Shown: positions 22,557-60,258 of the stretch, one piece after another
Position numbering within the stretch: position 1 is the first letter of the stretch
Layout: each line of letters opens with the position of its first letter
Source of the DNA: Dimorphilus gyrociliatus
Taxonomy: Eukaryota > Animalia > Annelida
Length of the DNA stretch: 64,000 bases
Direction: 5' to 3'
Assembly (NCBI GenBank): GCA_904063045.1
Contig: CAJFCJ010000004.1
Coordinates: 1,357,713 to 1,421,712 of the forward strand
Made by a program: the position numbers and the translations under genes
The notes under the pieces: generated by a model
The model's input: the letters and a program-made list of their open reading frames with translations, nothing else
Database searches by the model: none
Told to the model about the DNA's origin: nothing

Positions 22557-25500
22557 ATGTTTGGCTGGAAACTTCTAGTAATAACCTTAATTGTTACAAT
22601 TGTTGTCTGTAATGCTTCCGCGAAGAATGTTACCAAAAATACTAAAAAAGTAAATAATAAGGATAAAAAGATTTTGGAGAGCAAATCATCGAAAATAACT
22701 GTTAAACCCAAACAAAAAAAATTACCTGTAAAAGTAACAAAAAGCCCAAAGCCAATAAAAAATAACTTAAATAAAAATTCAACAAAACATAAAAATAAGC
22801 AAATTGGAAATAATTTAAAATTATCCAAGCAGAAACCAAATCATCCACAGCTTTTATTTGACCGCAATCACTTAAAAGCTTTAAGGAATGGATGGAATAA
22901 GACTTCACCCTTTATAAAGCAACAGATTATGCGTGTTGTTGAAAGAGACATAAAGTTTCCTCTAACGGATTTAAATGAAACCTTCATAACGAAACATGGA
23001 TTCATACTTGGATCAAATTTACCACTGTACACTATATACTGCGAAATTCATCAAAATAAAACCTGTAAGGAAAATCTATTGGAAATGATGGATTTTGTTG
23101 TCAAGTTGAAAACTTGGAAGGATGAAAGGTTTATGAGCGATAAAACGTTATCGACTATGATATCAGGTTTTACGATATCAATCGATATAATTATGGATTC
23201 TTTACCATCTTGGAGAATATCAAAATACACAAAAAAGTTGGAACTAGAAGCTCAAAGGTTATATGCAGATTCTAGATCTTTGTGGTGGGGCTCGAATCCT
23301 CTGCATGAAATTAGCGTAAATAATCATATGGCCCTCTTTCTTGTTGGTTTATTTGGTAAAATACAAAAAAACAATAATTCCTCTCTGTGGATAGTTTCCG
23401 GTGGACGTTTTCTCGATCGTGTTCTGCACATAGCTAATGGGGTCACCGACGGCTCACTACCTATATCCTTATTAGATAGTCAGAAAGCAAGCTTGCCCCT
23501 GATGATTTATATTCACCTGACAGAACGTCACTACCAAATACCTGCAGCTGCCCAAAGTTGGATATATTCCCATTTAGTCTTTACGCTTCACGAAATTTTA
23601 CCACTTTTCTCCATTCCTGATTCAGTTGTTGATCAACACCCCCGTTGGTGTTACGGACCAGAAGCACAATTAGCTTTTCTTGATCGCTTCGCGGCAGCTG
23701 ATGGCAGAGCTTCATGGATTTTGAATAAAATCCTTGTAAATAATGCATACAAAGATATAATCTCCGTAAGAAAGTCGTGGAAAGTTACACCTAGTCTATT
23801 TTATTATTTAATTTGGAAAGCCGATGGTATAAAACCCACTAGACCTCGCCTCACTGCAGGCTTATTTCACCTCCCAGATTCAGGTTTATTGAGGTATAGA
23901 GATACTAACTGGGACTTATTTCTCAGAGCTTCAAGACCCTATGGGCCTACAGTTCAAGATGCTCTAGAAAAATCTACATTAGATTTCAGTTATACAAATT
24001 TAACTTCTCTTGATGAACCCCCTTATCAGGGCGGATTTAATTTAATTATTCGAGGAATTCCTGTTTTCACTGCCTTTCAAGGAAGTGTTTTTACTGACCT
24101 ACAGAATTCAATTAGTTTTCTTGTTAGAAACTCAGACGAAAATGGTTGCCTTAAACCATGGTTTGGACAACTTGGAGAATGTTCGGAAAGACGCTCCTTA
24201 TTTTCGAAATCAGATGTTATAGCTGCTACAAGAACGATAAAGGAATTGACGCTTTTGGCAGTAGACATAGCTGACGCTTATCCATCCTTTCTAAAATTAA
24301 ATAGCGTTCAGAGAAGAGTCCTCGTTTTAGGATCCGAAATGCTGATCATTGTTGACCATATTCACGCACACAGTGACACTCCTATAAGATTAATGTCCTC
24401 TAGTTTTGCTAATATGTACTTTTCATGGGAGGAGGGTAAAAGTTTACCAGGTTTTCCCGTCAACTTTCTAAACACTCCTGACGGTAAAATACAAGTACAA
24501 GTTACGTCCCTCAGCTCTACAAGCAAACGAGTAAAAACGGAGATTGTCAATACCACTGTAATTGAGAAGAGCGGAGGAAAGATTGATGTAAGCCTTCTAA
24601 ATGTCACCTTTGCACTAGATGATAGTTTAAGTACAATCGTTTATATAATTGGTGCACCAAATGTTCAAGTTATATCAAATAGAATGGGTATGTCTAATAG
24701 AAGAGATTCATTCTTTGTTCATTTACAATCTGATAAGCAGGCAGGATTATTTCTTATATTTTATTATACTTTAATTAAAATATTAAACTCAATTTTGCAG
24801 TATCAAATTAGAAAATATACTGTAGATTTTTCACTTTTTATTAGTAATAATTATCTTAAAATCTAATTTAAGAGCTATTTATCTTTTAATCATTATCAAT
24901 TTATTAAGGATCTCTCGTTAATCTTATTTTTTTCCAAGTAAAATAAATTTATGGCGATTTATAAGAGGAAATCCTGCCTTCAAATAGGAATACGAAGTTA
25001 TTATGAGATACGCCGATAGGAACATTTGCGAAATTAACGATTTAAAAACGAATGATACAGTATCGTTTGAAGCTTTTAAATCGGTTAAAAAAAGAAAGAT
25101 AATGGACCTAAAGAGGATTGGAGCCCGTTCAAGTCCTTTTTTTAAAAGAGTTAGAAATGCAAAAGAGTTTGGAAAAAAGTTTAGAAAATATTCACCATTG
25201 ACAAAAGATTTCGAATCAGATGGATTTGCCGACATAGATCATATTGTTGAAAAGGATTTGATAAAGAAAGCTACTCCAACAAAACCCTCTACCACACCCA
25301 TTACAACCACTGTTCCGGGAACAACTACTCAATTTACTGACTGGAATATGAAAGGATTAAACTCTATTGAAAGAGATATCTTCCTACGAATTCACTCTAG
25401 AAAGATTGCCAGTAACGAAGAAGTAAAACAGCAACGACACGAAGTAAATTACAATAAATTGCCGAATTTATCAACACATCCCACAGTAGCATTTACAGTT

Positions 25501-25599
25501 ATTGTTATACTTTCATTTATTCTTGCTATAATCATCTTTAAAATATTTATATTCAGGTTTTTTCGTAGATTTCTGAGATTTATTTTTGTTCGATCGTAA
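22557..25599 (+). CDS. Dermatan-sulfate epimerase (DSE/DSEL)-like protein with signal peptide and C-terminal TM; exons 22557-24740 and 24988-25599 (predicted GC-AG intron)
   Basis: Motifs resemble human DSE as recalled: VTDGSL, ERHY, WCYGPEAQLAFLDRF (DSE WFYGPESQLVFLDKF), CLKPWFGQLGEC (CFSPWVGQVTEDC), AYPSFLKLNSVQRRVLVLGSEMLIIVDHIH ([30 protein letters not shown]). TM segment TVAFTVIVILSFILAIIIFKIFIF. Confidence 0.85.
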
Positions 25600-25943
25600 A
25601 TGTTTTAAATACATAAAATGTCTATTAAATCTATTTATTAACAAAGACAAAGAAAAACATTATATTCTATTATCGCTCTTTCAAAGAAAAATATTAGGAA
25701 ATATTTATATTATTATGAACAAACTAACTTTTTTTTTTGATAAGTTCCTTAGTTTTCTACTATTTAAAGTCTTTTGCAGGCCTAACTATTTTTTTTATAT
25801 AACTTCTGCTATTTCTTTCGTCTGTTAATTCTCATTTCGTAGATTTCTTTAAAATGTTTATTATATATAACATAACATTAGTAACAATCATTATTGTACA
25901 TTGGTTTAAATATATAAAATATCTATAACTGAATGTCAGTAAA

Positions 25944-27722
25944 ATGAAGCTTGTTATCATTGGTTTAGCTGTATTTTTAGGTTTGTATTTACTAACTAAA
26001 TAGTAGAGTATGAAAAGTAAATATGTTGAAGAAAATATACTCTTTTACAATCATAGCTGGAAGTTTTGCTCGAATAGAACCAAATGAAGAATTTCGAGCT
26101 GTTTGGGTAGCCACCGTTAATAATTTGGATTGGCCATCGAGTAAAACATTACGGGTTCCTCAACAGATTCTTGAATTACAGTAAATAATTATTTAGATAT
26201 TTAGGGTCTATAAAATTTTATTGGTCTCTCTTAAGCCATACTTATTATTCTGTAATTGTTTTTATAGGAGAATTATCGATTACGTCAAAGAGAGTCGTAT
26301 GAATGCTATTATCTTTCAAGTAAAAGTTTTCTCTTTCTTTCATCTTTCACTGCCTTAATTATTCTCCCAGATTGTTAATATGCTATTTATTGTATATTAT
26401 TTTTAATGTTTAAAACAATAATCATCTAGATACGACCGGCTGGTGACGCTCTTTACAACAGTTCAATTGAACCTTGGAGTGTTTATATGACTAACAGTCA
26501 AGGGACTCCACCTTCACCTTTTTACGATCCCTTGAGTTTTCTAATAGCAAAAGCCCATGAGCAGAACATAGAAGTTCATGCTTGGGTAAATCCATACCGT
26601 GCAAATTTGAGACCGGATTGGACTGGTTTAGCCCCAAATCATATGGCTAACGAATTTAGGCAGTATGCTTACCCGTACGGAAACTATCTGTGGATGGATC
26701 CAGGAGCCAAACCTGTTCAAGACCGTCTATCAAAGGTAATAAGGGACGTTCTCGATCGATACGATGTTGATGGTATCCACTGGGATGATTACTTTTATCC
26801 ATATCCAGTTAATAGTGTATCGTTTCCGGATGATAAGACTTATAACGATTATCTATCGGCTGGAGGAGCTTTGCCTAGGGACGATTGGAGAAGAAAGAAC
26901 GTTAATGATCTTGTCCAACGAGTTTATAACGAAATCAAAGCGTTAAAGCGTCACGTTAAATTTAGTATTAGCCCATTTGGTATCTATCGACCGGGTCATC
27001 CAGAGGGGATGCCTCGCCCTATAGCAGGATTTGATCAGTATACGCAGTTATATGCCGATGCTAAACTGTGGCTACAAAACGGCTGGGTCGACTTTCTGTC
27101 TCCTCAACTCTACTGGGAAATTGATCCCCCAGCACAAAGCTATACTACGTTGTTAAATTGGTGGTGCAATGTAAATCAACAGTCAAAAAATAGACACATT
27201 TATGCTGGTAACGCTGTTTATAAAATTGAAAATAACGATTGGCCTGCAAATGAAATAAAACGCCAAATAGAAGTTTCTCGATCTTTAACAGAATTAAACT
27301 CCCTTGGAAATGTTCATTTTCGGGTTAAACTACTTATGAATAACATCAAAGGAATAGCAGACTTATTAAAAAATCACGTTTATACTAAAGTAGCTGCAAT
27401 TCCCCCAATGCCTTGGCTAGCAAATTCAACATTTATTGAAACGGCAAAAGGAGTTAGAACTGGTGGTTGTTTAATAATCTGGAATAAACCCACGCAACCT
27501 GTTCATAAGTGGGGCCTTTTTAAATGGAGAGATAATGAATGGTCTCTAACTAACATTCTTAGCGGAAAATTAATTCATGCTGAAGTAAGAGAACCCGGTA
27601 GATATGCAGTAGCAGCCTATAATGAAGGATGGGTTAAAAGCATCCTATCTGATCAAGTTGAAGTTACTGAATTTCAGTTAAACGAATTTGATCCCTACTT
27701 TGCTGCTGGGTGCGATCAATAA
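25944..27722 (+). CDS. Secreted GHL10 / DUF187 (YddW/DigH-like) glycosyl hydrolase; exons 25944-25980, 26057-26180, 26268-26319, 26430-27722
   Basis: Spliced N-terminus MKLVIIGLAVFLAGSFARIEPNEEFRAVWVATVNNLDWPS...MNAIIFQ|IRPAGDALY...EPWS, followed by DPL, EVHAWVNPYR, DGIHWDDYFYPY, FSISPFG, DFLSPQLYW and AIPPMPWL. These are hallmark GHL10 motifs. Three in-frame GT-AG introns. Confidence 0.92.
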
Positions 27723-28588
27723 ATCAGCAATTCTTCTTTAATTCGCTTTTAGTTAAACTATAAAATCTAAATAAACAATTTTTATTTATTTAAAAAACAA
27801 AACCTGAATTACTTGTCCCCAAATCATAATTTCGATTATTAAAAGATAGGAAGATCGACAGTCATGCGTTAATTAGAATATACTTTTTTTAACAAAGCCT
27901 ATTATAATGACAATTATAACAATTTTCATTAGTAAGACAAGGGCTAAGAGCATTTAAATTATTATTTATAATAGAAATGTACTTTCAGGACAAAAATGAG
28001 ACATTATATTTCACTTGCTTGTTGAAAAAGAAAGAGAATAATTCCTAAAGCAGTTCTTCAGTTTAGCTAAAAAAAAATTTAACAAGTGACGCCTTTAAAA
28101 CAATAAGTGAAGGTGAAAAAAAAACGTTAAAAGCTCTTAAGGAAAATAGTCACGAAAAATCTTCAGTCAACTAAAACACTAATAATATTGTCAAATATAT
28201 AGAATGCGTGTTTTTAAGTAGACTTGTCTGCTTAAATTCTTCAAATTCGATCAATACTCTTCAGGTTAGAATAAACCTGTTATAAAAAGCATATTGCTCC
28301 GTCAAAGGAGACTGATACAGGGTGTCTTAGAGAACTTCCGGATCTAGTATACTATATATCATTTTGAAACTTAAAAAATGAAATTTTTTTCTTAAATATG
28401 AAGATTACGATAATAAAGAATTTTGATATATTTTTGTTGACATGTCTATTCATTAAAGGTGAGTTGAGAATACGTTAGAGAAGCCTCTAATAAAAACGAT
28501 TCTTAATGAATATGTAGTTTATACCATGTGCATTCTAATATTTGCTTATAAGAATTTCACATTTCCAATTTCTTACAATTACTTTTGT

Positions 28589-30223
28589 ATGTTTCGCGAT
28601 ATTTTACTATTTCTACTTCTATTGCTATCTAACAATGTTTAATAATCTTACAACACTTGTTAAAGATAGATAAAAATGTAATAATTTCAAATTTCAACAA
28701 CTTTACATGTAGGTTTAAAAAGAATCATTTGTATAGACAGTAGCAAGTCAAATATGATGCGGGCCTCTTGTTGACTTTTATTGATAGTCATTATAATCTT
28801 TATACTATGCATTACATGTAATTTATATTTGCCTTTATATATAAAGTACATATATGGTCTACAGTATAATCTAATACATGTACATACAAATATTTATTTA
28901 ATTTAAAATATTTTATATATATATATATATACTGTATCATTATGACAGCAACTTTTCAAGAGTTCTATAAATGGGTAGCTTCTATTTTAGTATAAAATCG
29001 AAAGAGGCCGACATTTTTACAAAGAACATCTTTTACAACTATTTAGAAAAGAAAATTTTGTTTTTACCTACAGCCTTTGGACATGCTCCTATTTTCAATA
29101 CGTCAACTTTACCTGATCAATTTGTCTTTCTGAAAAAAGGGGCAACTACAAAATTCAACTGTTCAAGTTATGGCTTTCCCAAGCCAAAGTAATATTCATA
29201 TATATATATACATATATTCATGTACACCATATTTCTATCCTCTATTAATATAGATACGAATTTTACCAACATGGAAAATTACTTGATACTGAATTCTTTG
29301 AAAAGGATCCGAGTAAAACAGGGGTTTTGATAATAGAGGATAGTAAAAGAATACACACAGGAAATTATTCCTGTAAAGCCAGTAATAGCTTTGGAACTGT
29401 TTCCTATAATTTCAAAGTAAATTTACCAGGTCAGTAGACAAGTTTACTCGTAAAAACAAATTTTATCGCATACTAAAGACAATTAGATTTATATTTTGGC
29501 ATTATTTTTCAATTTAAAACATTTTATTAATTTAATAACCAATGTATAAGAAATTAAAATACAAAGAAAGAACACGAAAAAAACACTTAAAACAGTAGAA
29601 AAATATCAATTACAACCAACGACACATTTCTATACTCTTGAGGCTTTTTTAATTGCCTTTGGATGATATCTTTTTCGTTATGTAGGCCTTGGAAATACAA
29701 TATTAAATATTTATAAAAATGTAATAAAAACTTTTTTCATTATCAATTTATTATTGAATCTTTCTTCCATAGAATTAGAAGGGTTTTTATCGGATCCTCT
29801 TGGAGAAGTTGAAGGTTCTTTGCGTGATAGCCTTCGAATCCAGGCGCCTTTATTTCGTTTCAGTGGCAACGACTTGGGTAAACTTCGTTTCAATTGGTAC
29901 AAGGATAGCATATTGCTAGAAAGGAGTGAAAGATTAATACTGAATGACAATGGTATCTCTAATCTTTTATTATATTTTTAAACAATTTATTCAATTAATA
30001 AATCATTTGTTTAACACAATAACTTATAGGTGATTTGTATATTTTAAATTTGGAGAAAGAAGATATTGGCAAATACTATTTAAATATATCATTTCCTTAT
30101 CAGAATCAATTTATTATTAGTGATGAAATAAATGTATTTATTAAAGGTTAGTTGAAAACTGTAATGCTGATGCATTGCTCTTTCATTATTTCTCAGTCTA
30201 AATATTGTAAAATGAAATAAATT

Positions 30224-58653: not shown

Positions 58654-60258
58654 ATGGCCAAATACGAACCAGAACCATTCAAGATTAAAGCCACAGAACC
58701 TATTAGGCTAATTACAAGAGAAGAAAGAGAAAAAGTTCTACAAAAAGCTTATTTTAATACCTTAAACATGGCTTCCTCGGATATTTTTATCGACCTCTTA
58801 ACCGACTCTGGAAATTCATCCATGACTGATAGACAATGGTCGGGTTTAATGATGGGAGATGAATCCTACACTGGAAGTCGAAGTTTCTTCCGTTTAGAAG
58901 AAGTTGTACAATCATTAACAGGTTAGACAATTGTATTGTAAATCCATAGACTGGCTCACGATTCATTACTTCAAAACAGTATTGTAAAAAAAGCTAAGAC
59001 TCTACATTGAGTTAATACTGTATAATATCTATTATTAATTTGCTATTTCCACTTTAATGTAAAGACAATAACTGTTTATTTATCGTTTAAGGTTATAAAC
59101 ACGTTCTCCCAGTTCACCAAGGTCGTGCTGCCGAAAATGTTGTGTTTCCTTTGTTAATTAAAAAAGGGCAAGTTGTCATAGGAAATACAAACTTTACTAC
59201 ATCGAAGGCACATATTCAAATCAACCAGGGCATATCCTTAGATTTTATAAGTTCGGATTCTCTAAATATATCAGTTGAAAAAGATTTTAAAGGAAACTTG
59301 GATACTGATCAATTATTGACATACTTAAAAGAAAACGGATCGCAGAATGTAGCTTTCATAATGATAACTATTACTAATAATAATATTGGAGGTTTACCAG
59401 TTAGTATGCAAAATATAAAAGAAGTATCTAAAATAGCAAAAGAACATGGAATTCTATTAGTATTTGACGCTGCTCGTTTTGCTGAAAATGCCTATTACAT
59501 TCATGAAAGAGAGGATTCTTTTAAAGAAAAAAACTTGAAACGTAAAAGCAGAGTTTTTTTTTTATTAAATTATCATAAAAGTTTTATTACTTTTATCTTT
59601 AGAAATTATTCTTGAAATGTTCTCGTTTGGAGATGTTGTCCTTATGAGTGGAAAGAAAGATGCTGCAGTAAATATAGGTGGTCTTATTGTTGTTAAAGAT
59701 AAAGTGGATTTGTACGAAAGTGCAAAATATGCCATGATACCTATAGAAGGTTTTCCCCAATACGGAGGTCTTGCTGGAAGAGATATGGAAGCATTTGCAA
59801 TTGGTTTGGAAGAGTCAACTCGATATGAATTTCTCCAGCAACGCATTAAACAAGTTGAAAATTTAGGTAAGCAACTAATAGCTGCAGGAATACCTATACA
59901 AAAACCTATTGGCGGTCACGCCATTTATTTGGATGCGAAGAAGATCCTCCCCCATATTCCACCTTGTGAATTTCCAGCTTTGGCTCTATGCATACATTTA
60001 TACTTGGAAAGTGGAATTCGTGGCAGTGAAATGGGTTCTTTTAGTTATGGTAGAGGCCCCAACGGTGAAGATGGAATCAGCCCCTGCGAATTTTTAAGAT
60101 TGTGCATTCCAAGAAGAGTCTATACTGATAATCACATGAGATATGTAGCAGATAACGTAATAAAAGTGTGTGAGAAACGGCAGGAAATCAAGGGTCTGAA
60201 ACTTATTTTTGAAACCAAATACCTTAGGGATGCAACGTCCAAATTGGAATTTAAGTAG
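58654..60258 (+). CDS. PLP-dependent beta-eliminating lyase, tryptophanase / tyrosine phenol-lyase homolog, 457 aa; exons 58654-58921, 59092-59541, 59603-60258
   Basis: EPFKIK, IDLLTDSG, GDESYTG (catalytic Tyr), HQGRAAE, DAARFAENAY, MSGKKD (PLP Lys), EGFPQYGGLAGRD, GGHAIYLDA, RLCIPRRVYT. Two in-frame GT-AG introns; exons sum to 1374 nt. Confidence 0.95.

What the first reader, a model, noticed from the sequence alone, without database searches (positions are those of the whole stretch)
25944..27722. Bacterial-type GHL10 (DigH/YddW) hydrolase domesticated in an animal genome
Seen: complete GHL10 motifs, a eukaryotic signal peptide, and three spliceosomal introns confined to the 5' end, with the rest on one 1.3-kb exon. 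The gene is flanked by intron-rich host genes, so it is not contamination. Established: GHL10/DUF187 is mainly bacterial, and E. coli DigH (YddW) is a peptidoglycan glycosyl hydrolase. Inference: an old horizontal transfer now used as a secreted lysozyme-like enzyme for digesting or controlling bacteria, or for algal polysaccharide.
Basis: partly seen in the sequence, partly recalled or inferred. Interest (0 to 1): 0.7.

Follow-up and report, generated by a model that had tools for sequence, protein, structure and literature searches.

The report
Cyanobacterial-type wall hydrolase gene in annelid
A small marine worm's chromosome carries a spliced, transcribed and selectively maintained gene for a secreted sugar-chain-cutting enzyme of a bacterial family known to cut bacterial cell walls. 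It is one copy of a gene family that molluscs, annelids and arthropods share and that most likely came from cyanobacteria long ago.

Summary
A 4-exon gene lies at 25944-27722 (+), with GT..AG introns of 76, 87 and 110 bases. Spliced transcript contigs from two studies match it without a mismatch. It encodes a 501-aa protein: signal peptide, GHL10 (PF02638) TIM barrel, and a C-terminal Fn3-like domain.

It is a single-copy gene deep inside a contig of over 1.4 Mb, between animal genes. The genome is 77.9 Mb, probably that of Dimorphilus gyrociliatus. GC3 matches the host. dN/dS against a relative at 81% identity is 0.09.

In an outgroup-rooted ML tree all 31 eukaryote rows form one clade (100/99). 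That clade is sister to, or nested in, the GHL10 of filamentous cyanobacteria (joint clade 100/100). The named members are molluscs, annelids and arthropods. Intron positions are shared with two relatives. So the transfer is old and not special to this genome.

The nearest characterised enzymes are C. difficile Cwp19, a peptidoglycan lytic transglycosylase (fold TM 0.78), and E. coli DigH (34% identity). Twelve of Cwp19's 13 proposed active-site residues are kept. Activity on cell wall is inferred, not shown, and chitin or another glycan remains possible.

Animal homologues are already annotated ("YngK-like"). I found no paper on them, so this is a new member of a known kind. The scan also holds other transfer candidates in this genome.

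The parts
25811..25943 (+). 5' untranslated region (minimum extent)
   Evidence: Transcript contig of X3 starts at 25811 and that of X2 at 25908. Contigs cannot fix the true start.
25944..25980 (+). Exon 1 coding part: start codon and most of the signal peptide (12 codons plus 1 base)
   Evidence: Translation. The exon's end is fixed by the spliced contigs.
25981..26056 (+). Intron 1, 76 nt, GT..AG, phase 1
   Evidence: Skipped in contigs of X2 and X3. Splice sites shown.
26057..26180 (+). Exon 2: end of the signal peptide and start of the GHL10 barrel, including the Trp that matches Cwp19 Trp36
   Evidence: Hits homologue profile positions 35-70, E 9e-13. Pfam GHL10 positions 1-20, weak.
26181..26267 (+). 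Intron 2, 87 nt, GT..AG, phase 2
   Evidence: The same position is interrupted in the relative's contig L088.
26268..26319 (+). Exon 3: ends in the Gln that matches Cwp19 Gln77
   Evidence: Hits profile positions 73-88. Bounded by the spliced contigs.
26320..26429 (+). Intron 3, 110 nt, GT..AG, phase 0, between Phe-Gln and Ile-Arg-Pro
   Evidence: An intron lies at the same place and phase in L083, another eukaryote at 61% identity, and in L088.
26430..27722 (+). Exon 4: 430 codons plus stop. Holds the rest of the GHL10 TIM barrel (to about 27389), the Fn3-like domain and a short tail
   Evidence: PF02638 E 1.5e-46. AlphaFold2 pLDDT 92.6. Foldseek best match Cwp19 5oq2, E 2.4e-28.
26784..26792 (+). 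Asp-Asp-Tyr of the His-Trp-Asp-Asp-Tyr-Phe-Tyr motif (full-length D190, D191, Y192), matching Cwp19 Asp195, Asp196, Tyr197
   Evidence: HMMER alignment to 5oq2. Invariant in 70 homologues. Residue roles as proposed in PMC5765458.
27006..27017 (+). Four-residue insert Gly-Met-Pro-Arg, shared only with annelid and arthropod homologues
   Evidence: Column view of 70 rows: absent from all bacterial and all mollusc rows.
27318..27323 (+). Phe-Arg where Cwp19 has the cis-peptide pair Phe367-Ser368 (proposed S1 pocket); Ser replaced by Arg
   Evidence: Arg is also present in P0001 and Owenia P0002; most homologues have Ser.
27447..27674 (+). C-terminal Fn3-like beta-sandwich domain
   Evidence: Folded alone, pLDDT 92.5. 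Best fold matches are Fn3 domains and accessory beta-sandwiches of glycoside hydrolases, TMq 0.5-0.67, E 2e-3 to 1e-2. It aligns with cyanobacterial homologues.
27723..27784 (+). 3' untranslated region, with AATAAA at 27770-27775
   Evidence: X2 contig ends at 27784 and X4 at 27757. Sequence.

Best explanation
This is a working host gene of bacterial ancestry. It belongs to a protostome-wide family of secreted GHL10 glycosidases. An ancestor of that family was most likely taken from a filamentous cyanobacterium, or a close relative's gene pool, before molluscs, annelids and arthropods diverged.

After the transfer the gene gained an exon-encoded eukaryotic signal peptide and spliceosomal introns, and took on host base composition.

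The protein is exported through the secretory pathway. Its TIM barrel keeps the Cwp19-type pocket. This pocket has a single exposed carboxylate (D191, beside the buried D190) and a glycine where clan GH-A enzymes carry the second catalytic glutamate. Such a pocket suits a lytic-transglycosylase or substrate-assisted mechanism on an N-acetyl-hexosamine polymer.

The most likely substrate is the glycan backbone of bacterial peptidoglycan. The enzyme would then help the biofilm-grazing worm to digest or control bacteria, cyanobacteria included. The Fn3-like C-terminal domain was inherited with the gene and probably helps to hold the polymer.

Shown: gene structure, expression, integration, purifying selection, family membership, fold, and tree position. 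Inferred: secretion, mechanism, substrate, and physiological role.
For: Gene is real and expressed:
- Spliced contigs from two studies, with no mismatch.
- Single copy, inside contig C4 of 1.4 Mb or more.
- Animal genes on both sides.

Selection and base composition:
- dN/dS is 0.095 against the relative L088, with dS 1.13.
- GC3 is 0.30 against a window GC of 0.29.

Origin:
- Careful ML tree of 70 rows: eukaryote clade 100/99; eukaryotes plus cyanobacteria 100/100 against 22 bacteria of other phyla; eukaryotes sister to an Oscillatoriales-type group at 91/87. The quick trees agree.
- Best bacterial hits are cyanobacteria at 46-53% identity; other phyla reach 38-47%.

Age:
- Named members are gastropods, bivalves, the annelids Owenia and Capitella, an ostracod, a copepod, a springtail and a fly.
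- Intron 3 is shared with L083. Introns 2 and 3 are shared with L088.
- A derived 4-residue insert is shared by annelid and arthropod rows.

Function:
- Cwp19 E 3.9e-63 by sequence.
- Foldseek E 2.4e-28, TM 0.78, rmsd 2.3.
- Twelve of 13 residues proposed for the Cwp19 active site are kept.
- Cwp19 is a peptidoglycan lytic transglycosylase (PMC6016235). DigH is a hydrolase specific for denuded glycan (PMC12288456) and is 34% identical.
- Many of the closest cyanobacterial homologues carry SLH wall-anchoring domains, PF00395.
Against: - No enzyme assay or tissue localisation exists for any animal member.
- GHL10 substrates are not settled. The distant member DogH is reported to act on starch, cellobiose and melibiose (PMC9967864). 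Cwp19 lyses cells 13-66 times more slowly than lysozyme (PMC5765458).
- One pocket residue differs: Ser368 of Cwp19 is Arg here.
- A DUF187 protein occurs in the Lottia shell matrix (PMC4094399), which hints at an endogenous matrix role in molluscs.
- The AU test does not reject cyanobacteria as a clade with animals outside it (p 0.45). A cyanobacterial donor, as opposed to a sister lineage, is therefore not proven.
- Absence from deuterostomes, cnidarians and other eukaryotes rests only on the best 120 rows of two searches.
- The animal gene tree (annelids with arthropods, molluscs apart) does not match the species tree. Old paralogy or later transfers are possible.
Confidence: 0.6

Rival explanations
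1. Same gene and same bacterial origin, but the enzyme works on an animal or dietary glycan and not on peptidoglycan. Candidates are chitin or another GlcNAc polymer of chaetae, cuticle or shell matrix, or an alpha- or beta-glucan from food.
For: - A DUF187 'glycosidase' is a component of the Lottia shell matrix proteome.
- All named carriers are protostomes that build chitinous structures.
- A pocket with one acid and no nucleophile also fits substrate-assisted cleavage of chitin-like polymers.
- DogH, another GHL10, is reported to act on starch.
- Cwp19 was never tested on chitin (substrate list).
- The Ser-to-Arg change lies in the proposed S1 pocket.
Against: - The two characterised members that are closest by sequence (Cwp19, and DigH at 34% identity) both act on peptidoglycan glycan. 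DogH is only about 21% similar to Cwp19.
- The nearest bacterial kin often carry SLH wall anchors.
- Cwp19 showed no activity on starch, pullulan or cellobiose.
Confidence: 0.3
2. The gene was inherited vertically from an early eukaryotic or holozoan ancestor and lost many times. Alternatively, the transfer ran from animals to cyanobacteria.
For: - The AU test leaves animals outside a cyanobacterial clade as a possibility.
- My sampling of eukaryotes is limited to the best 120 rows of each search.
Against: - The family is overwhelmingly bacterial and spans many phyla (quotes 1,642 proteins from 871 organisms).
- Animals form one tight clade at about 50% identity to cyanobacteria. That clade lies inside a bacterial radiation whose deeper branches are all bacterial.
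- No non-protostome eukaryote appeared in the searches.
- An intron-bearing animal gene is an unlikely donor to bacteria.
Confidence: 0.05
3. A recent, lineage-specific capture by this worm.
For: The same genome holds several apparently recent, intronless bacterial genes according to earlier notes of this scan (unchecked here).
Against: - The gene has three introns, two of them shared with a relative at 81% identity and one with a eukaryote at 61% identity.
- Its nearest kin are animals, not bacteria.
- GC3 equals that of the host.
Confidence: 0.02
4. Bacterial contamination or a mis-assembly.
For: None beyond the bacterial family assignment.
Against: - GT..AG introns are removed in transcripts of two studies.
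- AATAAA lies 10-15 bases before the transcript end.
- The gene sits in the middle of a contig of over 1.4 Mb, between animal genes.
Confidence: 0.01

Closest known systems
Cwp19 of Clostridioides difficile (PDB 5OQ2/5OQ3), GHL10 peptidoglycan lytic transglycosylase
   Same: - Same Pfam family.
- 315 residues align at E 3.9e-63.
- Predicted barrel superposes at TM 0.78, rmsd 2.3 A, 38% identity.
- Twelve of 13 proposed pocket residues are identical, including Asp-Asp-Tyr and the Gly that replaces the beta-7 glutamate.
   Different: - Cwp19 has three CWB2 wall-binding repeats and sits in the S-layer. The worm protein has none and carries an Fn3-like domain instead.
- Ser368 is Arg in the worm protein.
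- The worm protein has a eukaryotic signal peptide.
- Its activity is untested.
Cyanobacterial GHL10 proteins of Oscillatoriales and Nostocales ('family 10 glycosylhydrolase'; many with N-terminal SLH domains)
   Same: - Nearest bacterial relatives, at 46-53% identity over 93-97% of exon 4.
- Same barrel plus Fn3-like C-terminal domain architecture.
- Joint clade with the animal proteins at 100/100.
   Different: - The cyanobacterial genes have no introns.
- Their N-termini are bacterial, often with SLH anchors.
- They lack the 4-residue Gly-Met-Pro-x insert.
- No cyanobacterial member has been characterised, as far as I could find.
Animal 'glycosyl hydrolase YngK-like / UPF0748 / GHL10 domain-containing' proteins (Owenia, Capitella, Lottia, Patella, Haliotis, oysters, mussels, scallops, clams, Darwinula, Tigriopus, Allacma, Bradysia)
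   Same: - Orthologous or paralogous family at 44-57% identity.
- One clade with the window's protein.
- A DUF187 protein was detected in the Lottia shell matrix proteome.
   Different: - These are annotated automatically only. I found no paper on their origin or function.
- The window's copy and its 81% relative carry an extra C-terminal tail of about 20 residues.
DigH (YddW) of Escherichia coli
   Same: GHL10 barrel, 34% identity over 321 residues, E 2e-56. It acts on peptidoglycan glycan strands.
   Different: - DigH is an outer-membrane lipoprotein recruited to the division site and specific for denuded glycans.
- It has no Fn3-like domain.
- It is much more distant than Cwp19 or the cyanobacterial proteins.
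Other bacterial cell-wall hydrolase genes captured by eukaryotes (GH25 lysozymes, tae/dae amidases). Recalled from my own knowledge, not checked here.
   Same: The scenario is the same: a bacterial wall-degrading enzyme gene becomes a secreted host enzyme.
   Different: The enzyme family is different (GHL10). The carrier range is much wider and older (three protostome phyla).

Membership tests
GHL10 / PF02638 (DUF187, UPF0748) | Score above the Pfam gathering threshold | tested here: met
   159.4 bits against a cut-off of 27.9 for exon 4 alone. 189.7 bits in the genome scan.
GHL10 / PF02638 (DUF187, UPF0748) | (beta/alpha)8 barrel like the only solved member, Cwp19 | tested here: met
   AlphaFold2 pLDDT 92.6, pTM 0.90. 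Foldseek to 5oq2: E 2.4e-28, TMt 0.78, rmsd 2.3 A. The model lacks the first 71 residues (exons 1-3), which were not joined.
GHL10 / PF02638 (DUF187, UPF0748) | Conserved pocket residues listed for Cwp19 (W36, Q77, W127, R132, D195, D196, Y197, S250, Q295, Y297, G328, F367, S368) | tested here: met
   Twelve of 13 are identical: full-length W29, Q71, W123, R128, D190, D191, Y192, S252, Q297, Y299, G331, F368. S368 is Arg369 here.
GHL10 / PF02638 (DUF187, UPF0748) | Cleavage of peptidoglycan glycan strands | not testable with these tools
   Needs recombinant protein and muropeptide analysis.
Cwp19-type surface autolysin | C-terminal CWB2 (PF04122) wall-binding repeats | tested here: not met
   Pfam finds only GHL10 and a weak GHL6 hit. 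The C-terminus is an Fn3-like sandwich.
DigH-type divisome hydrolase | Bacterial lipoprotein signal and close sequence kinship to E. coli DigH | tested here: not met
   Only 34% identity. The N-terminus is a eukaryotic-style signal peptide on its own exon. It is a family relative, not a DigH orthologue.
Cyanobacterial barrel + Fn3-like GHL10 subfamily, with its animal offshoot | Full-length collinearity, including the C-terminal domain | tested here: met
   Alignments A1, A3 and A4. 93-97% of exon 4 is covered by cyanobacterial hits.
Horizontally acquired gene (bacterium to animal) | Animal sequences nested in, or sister to, a bacterial clade with strong support, with deeper branches bacterial | tested here: met
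   Eukaryote clade 100/99. Eukaryotes plus cyanobacteria 100/100 against 22 other bacteria. Sister versus nested is unresolved (AU p 0.45).
Horizontally acquired gene (bacterium to animal) | Physical integration and host-type expression | tested here: met
   Introns spliced in transcripts, host neighbours, large contig, host-like GC3.
Horizontally acquired gene (bacterium to animal) | Absence from outgroup eukaryotes | tested here: inconclusive
   Only protostomes are named among the best 120 rows of two searches. No taxon-restricted search was possible.

The most novel reading that the evidence does not exclude
Protostome animals possess an unrecognised class of 'lysozyme'. This would be a cyanobacterium-derived GHL10 lytic transglycosylase or muramidase, secreted by gut or epithelial cells, and unrelated to the c-, g-, i- and GH25-type lysozymes. 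The version in annelids and arthropods (4-residue loop insert, Ser-to-Arg pocket change in this lineage) may be retuned for particular walls such as those of cyanobacteria.
Probability: 0.35. Interest if true: 0.7.

Novelty: new member of a known kind. Interest (0 to 1): 0.45.

Why it matters
If the enzyme does cut peptidoglycan, then molluscs, annelids and several arthropods have carried a bacterial wall-cutting tool of cyanobacterial ancestry for perhaps half a billion years. This tool has escaped study. It would add a new enzyme family to invertebrate digestion and immunity, including in farmed oysters, mussels, scallops and abalone.

It is also a clean, well-dated example of how a transferred gene is fitted with a signal-peptide exon and introns. 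The compact worm genome gives a simple single-copy gene in which to test this.

As it stands, the finding is a solid annotation. It is not a surprise in kind.

Tried and rejected
- Joined protein. Exon 4 (by reference) was the query throughout. Exons 2 and 3 were scored separately against a homologue profile. The barrel model therefore lacks its first strand and helix.
- ESM Atlas feature search. It returned only Bacteroidota-labelled GHL10 clusters and said nothing about the eukaryotic range.
- AU test for nesting inside cyanobacteria. Not decisive, p 0.45.
- Run X1. It was listed as holding all words of the stretch, but only 18-23-base pieces were laid. It gives no independent DNA check; the genome search serves instead.
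- Literature searches for GHL10, DUF187, PF02638, UPF0748 and YngK(-like), and for transfer-related terms with Capitella and Lottia. No paper on animal members was found, apart from a table row in the Lottia shell proteome. Supplements were not searched.
- Cluster look-up of ten unnamed eukaryote-side proteins. Only one could be named (Pacific oyster).
- The big representative search was not run. It returns no names, so it could not settle the taxonomic range.
- An apparent indel link between molluscs and cyanobacteria was considered and rejected. All outgroup bacteria also have the short form, so the long form is a derived insert of the annelid/arthropod branch.
- Contamination was rejected (see rivals).
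- A first tree script gave no answer and was rerun.
Full report
WHAT IS THERE

The + strand between 25944 and 27722 holds a four-exon gene. The long ORF at 26487-27722 scores 159.4 bits against Pfam GHL10 (PF02638; cut-off 27.9). The open frame continues upstream to 26430.

Laying public runs on 24800-28600 gave direct evidence for the gene model. A 1604-nt contig of run X2 and a 1618-nt contig of run X3 come from different studies and species labels. Both match the window without a single difference. Both skip exactly three segments, all GT..AG:
- 25981-26056 (76 nt; the tool reports the cut with a 3-base ambiguity)
- 26181-26267 (87 nt)
- 26320-26429 (110 nt)

The splice sites and the two split codons (GCT = Ala, CAG = Gln) were read from the sequence. 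The phases close a frame of 501 codons. The transcript contigs reach from at least 25811 to 27784. AATAAA lies at 27770-27775.

Exon 4 (430 aa, by reference) was the query. Exons 2 and 3 were scored one by one against a profile built from homologues only. They hit positions 35-70 and 73-88, directly before exon 4's 89-485.

Exon 1 and the first codons of exon 2 read Met-Lys, then fifteen mostly hydrophobic residues ending Ser-Phe-Ala. This has the form of a signal peptide. I read it by eye; no predictor was available. The profile match to the homologues begins a few residues later.

IT IS A HOST GENE

The window is G000 contig C4:1357713-1421712. The genome has 77.9 Mb in 349 contigs, and the gene is its only GHL10 copy. 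Flanking ORFs carry Kunitz, thyroglobulin-1, Ig and Patched/sterol-sensing domains. Separate transcript contigs end at 25508-25646 upstream and begin at 28312 downstream.

Third-codon GC of exon 4 is 0.30, against 0.29 for the window.

A contig from a related species (L088; protein P0001; 81% identical) shows the same exon 2, exon 3 and exon 4 boundaries. Against it, dN/dS is 0.095 with dS about 1.1, which indicates strong purifying selection.

The assembly statistics fit the published Dimorphilus gyrociliatus genome: 73.8 Mb, about 350 scaffolds, very short introns (bioRxiv 10.1101/2020.05.07.078311). Earlier notes of this scan reached the same identification. I treat it as probable, not proven.

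WHERE IT CAME FROM

The word search with exon 4 found the following:
- one unnamed relative at 81% identity
- animal proteins at 50-57% identity (Owenia, Capitella, Lottia, Patella, Haliotis, Mercenaria, Darwinula, Bradysia)
- a large number of cyanobacterial proteins at about 50% identity

A profile of the eukaryote-side rows added Tigriopus, Allacma, Mytilus, Pinctada, Mya, Dreissena and four scallops. A cluster look-up added the Pacific oyster. No deuterostome, cnidarian, sponge or protist was named among the best 120 rows of either search.

Two unnamed eukaryote-side rows were checked and are eukaryotic. P0004 lies on a 2.1-kb polyadenylated mRNA with an AATAAA signal. P0009 lies on an 807-kb contig with the domain split by introns.

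A scan of one genome per prokaryotic species gave named bacteria. Cyanobacteria reach 46-53% identity. Gemmatimonadota, Planctomycetota, Armatimonadota, Verrucomicrobiota, Bacteroidota and Burkholderiales reach 38-47%.

Three ML trees were built:
- An unrooted quick tree of 121 rows separates 33 eukaryote-side rows from 88 cyanobacterial rows by one branch (99).
- An outgroup-rooted quick tree of 87 rows gives a single eukaryote clade (91).
- The careful tree of 70 rows (LG+C20, ultrafast bootstrap / SH-aLRT) is the main result.

In the careful tree:
- The 31 eukaryote rows form one clade at 100/99.
- That clade is sister to eight Oscillatoriales-type cyanobacterial rows at 91/87.
- Eukaryotes plus cyanobacteria, with two stray MAG rows, form a clade at 100/100 against 22 bacteria of other phyla.

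An AU test does not reject the alternative in which the cyanobacteria form a clade with the animals outside it (p 0.45). 'Sister to or nested in cyanobacterial GHL10' is therefore the honest statement.

All deeper branches are bacterial and the family is overwhelmingly bacterial (quotes 1,642 proteins from 871 organisms). The direction of transfer is therefore bacterium to animal.

HOW OLD

Inside the animal clade, molluscs group at 100/99, with gastropods and bivalves apart. Hexapod-type rows group at 100/100. The annelid, ostracod and window rows group at 95/88. The last two groups join at 100/98.

A four-residue insert (Gly-Met-Pro-x; 27006-27017 here) is present in every annelid and arthropod row. 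It is absent from every mollusc and every bacterial row. It is therefore a derived marker of that branch.

Intron 3 (phase 0, between Phe-Gln and Ile/Val-Arg-Pro) lies at the identical place in L083, a eukaryote at 61% identity, where the intron is about 2.1 kb long.

A single acquisition before the protostome phyla separated, followed by losses, is the simplest reading. The gene tree unites annelids with arthropods, unlike the species tree. This points to old paralogy or to later animal-to-animal movement, and I could not resolve it.

WHAT IT DOES

The nearest solved protein is the catalytic region of C. difficile Cwp19, with E 3.9e-63 over 315 residues. The AlphaFold2 model of exon 4 is confident (pLDDT 92.6, pTM 0.90). 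Its best Foldseek match is Cwp19 (E 2.4e-28, TM 0.78, rmsd 2.3 A). Every other glycosidase barrel matches at E 1e-6 or worse.

Bradshaw et al. list thirteen conserved residues around the Cwp19 pocket (PMC5765458). Mapped through the HMMER alignment, twelve are identical here: W29, Q71, W123, R128, D190, D191, Y192, S252, Q297, Y299, G331 and F368 in full-length numbering. Ser368 of Cwp19 is Arg369 here. The 81% relative and one Owenia paralogue also have Arg at this site.

The glycine that replaces the second catalytic glutamate of clan GH-A is kept. The pocket therefore offers one exposed carboxylate. That arrangement suits a lytic-transglycosylase or substrate-assisted reaction on an N-acetyl-hexosamine polymer.

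Evidence from characterised relatives:
- Cwp19 was shown to be a peptidoglycan lytic transglycosylase (PMC6016235).
- E. coli DigH, 34% identical to the worm protein, is a hydrolase specific for denuded glycan (PMC12288456).
- Many of the nearest cyanobacterial homologues carry SLH wall anchors.

The last ~100 residues before a short disordered tail fold as an Fn3-like sandwish-type domain, that is, a beta-sandwich (pLDDT 92.5). It resembles Fn3 domains and the accessory sandwiches of several glycosidases only weakly (TMq 0.5-0.67, E 2e-3 to 1e-2). Because it aligns with the cyanobacterial proteins, it came with the gene.

My best reading (about 0.6 for the whole statement; about 0.9 for gene, origin and age; about 0.45-0.5 for substrate) is a secreted enzyme that cleaves the glycan strands of bacterial walls, used in digestion or defence by a biofilm-grazing worm.

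The main rival (0.3) keeps the origin but gives the enzyme another polymer:
- A DUF187 glycosidase sits in the Lottia shell matrix (PMC4094399).
- All carriers make chitin.
- Cwp19 was never tried on chitin.
- Cwp19 lyses cells 13-66 times more slowly than lysozyme.
- A distant GHL10 member, DogH, is reported to act on starch (PMC9967864).

COMPARISON AND NOVELTY

The protein is a member of GHL10 by score, fold and pocket. It is not a Cwp19-type autolysin, because it has no CWB2 repeats. It is not a DigH orthologue.

The animal family is already present in public annotation as 'glycosyl hydrolase YngK-like', 'UPF0748' or 'GHL10 domain-containing protein'. Eight papers in the library mention GHL10 and none concerns animals. 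None mentions UPF0748.

Capture of bacterial wall hydrolases by eukaryotes is a known kind of event (my own knowledge, not checked here). I therefore rate this a new member of a known kind, with interest 0.45. It is a sound, well-supported annotation with a testable and possibly useful function, but no surprise in principle.

Noticed in passing
window 59617-60255 (+), with 59142-59615: An ORF with a Beta_elim_lyase (tryptophanase/TPL-type) domain, E 2.3e-17, lies about 32 kb downstream. It is a second enzyme of mostly bacterial type in the same window.
   Followed up: partly
P0121 (Tigriopus, 911 aa): The copepod protein scores 1158 bits against the eukaryote profile, far above any single-domain member. 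It is nearly twice as long, so it is probably a tandem GHL10 duplication or a fused gene model.
   Followed up: no
trees; columns: Annelid and arthropod GHL10 group together (100/98, plus a shared 4-residue insert) to the exclusion of molluscs, against the species tree. Owenia and Bradysia each have two paralogues. Old paralogy with differential loss, or animal-to-animal transfer, is unexplained.
   Followed up: partly
L024 (Nostoc sp. T09), L029 (Xenobia MAG), L071 (Proteobacteria MAG); One Nostoc GHL10 groups with Armatimonadota and Verrucomicrobiota instead of other cyanobacteria. Two non-cyanobacterial MAG genes fall inside the cyanobacterial clade. This suggests transfers among bacteria or binning errors.
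   Followed up: no
window 27684-27719: A C-terminal tail of about 12-20 residues ending Gly-Cys-Asp-Gln is predicted disordered (pLDDT below 50). Only the 81% relative P0001 shares it; all other homologues stop earlier.
   Followed up: no
window 24800-28600, run X1: The run flagged as the possible source and as holding all words of the stretch laid only 18-23-base fragments of long contigs, with loose ends. It looks like a filter or repeat artefact of the tool rather than biology.
   Followed up: no
Transcript contigs end at 25508-25646, only about 170-300 bases before the GHL10 transcript starts. The intergenic spacing is very tight.
   Followed up: no
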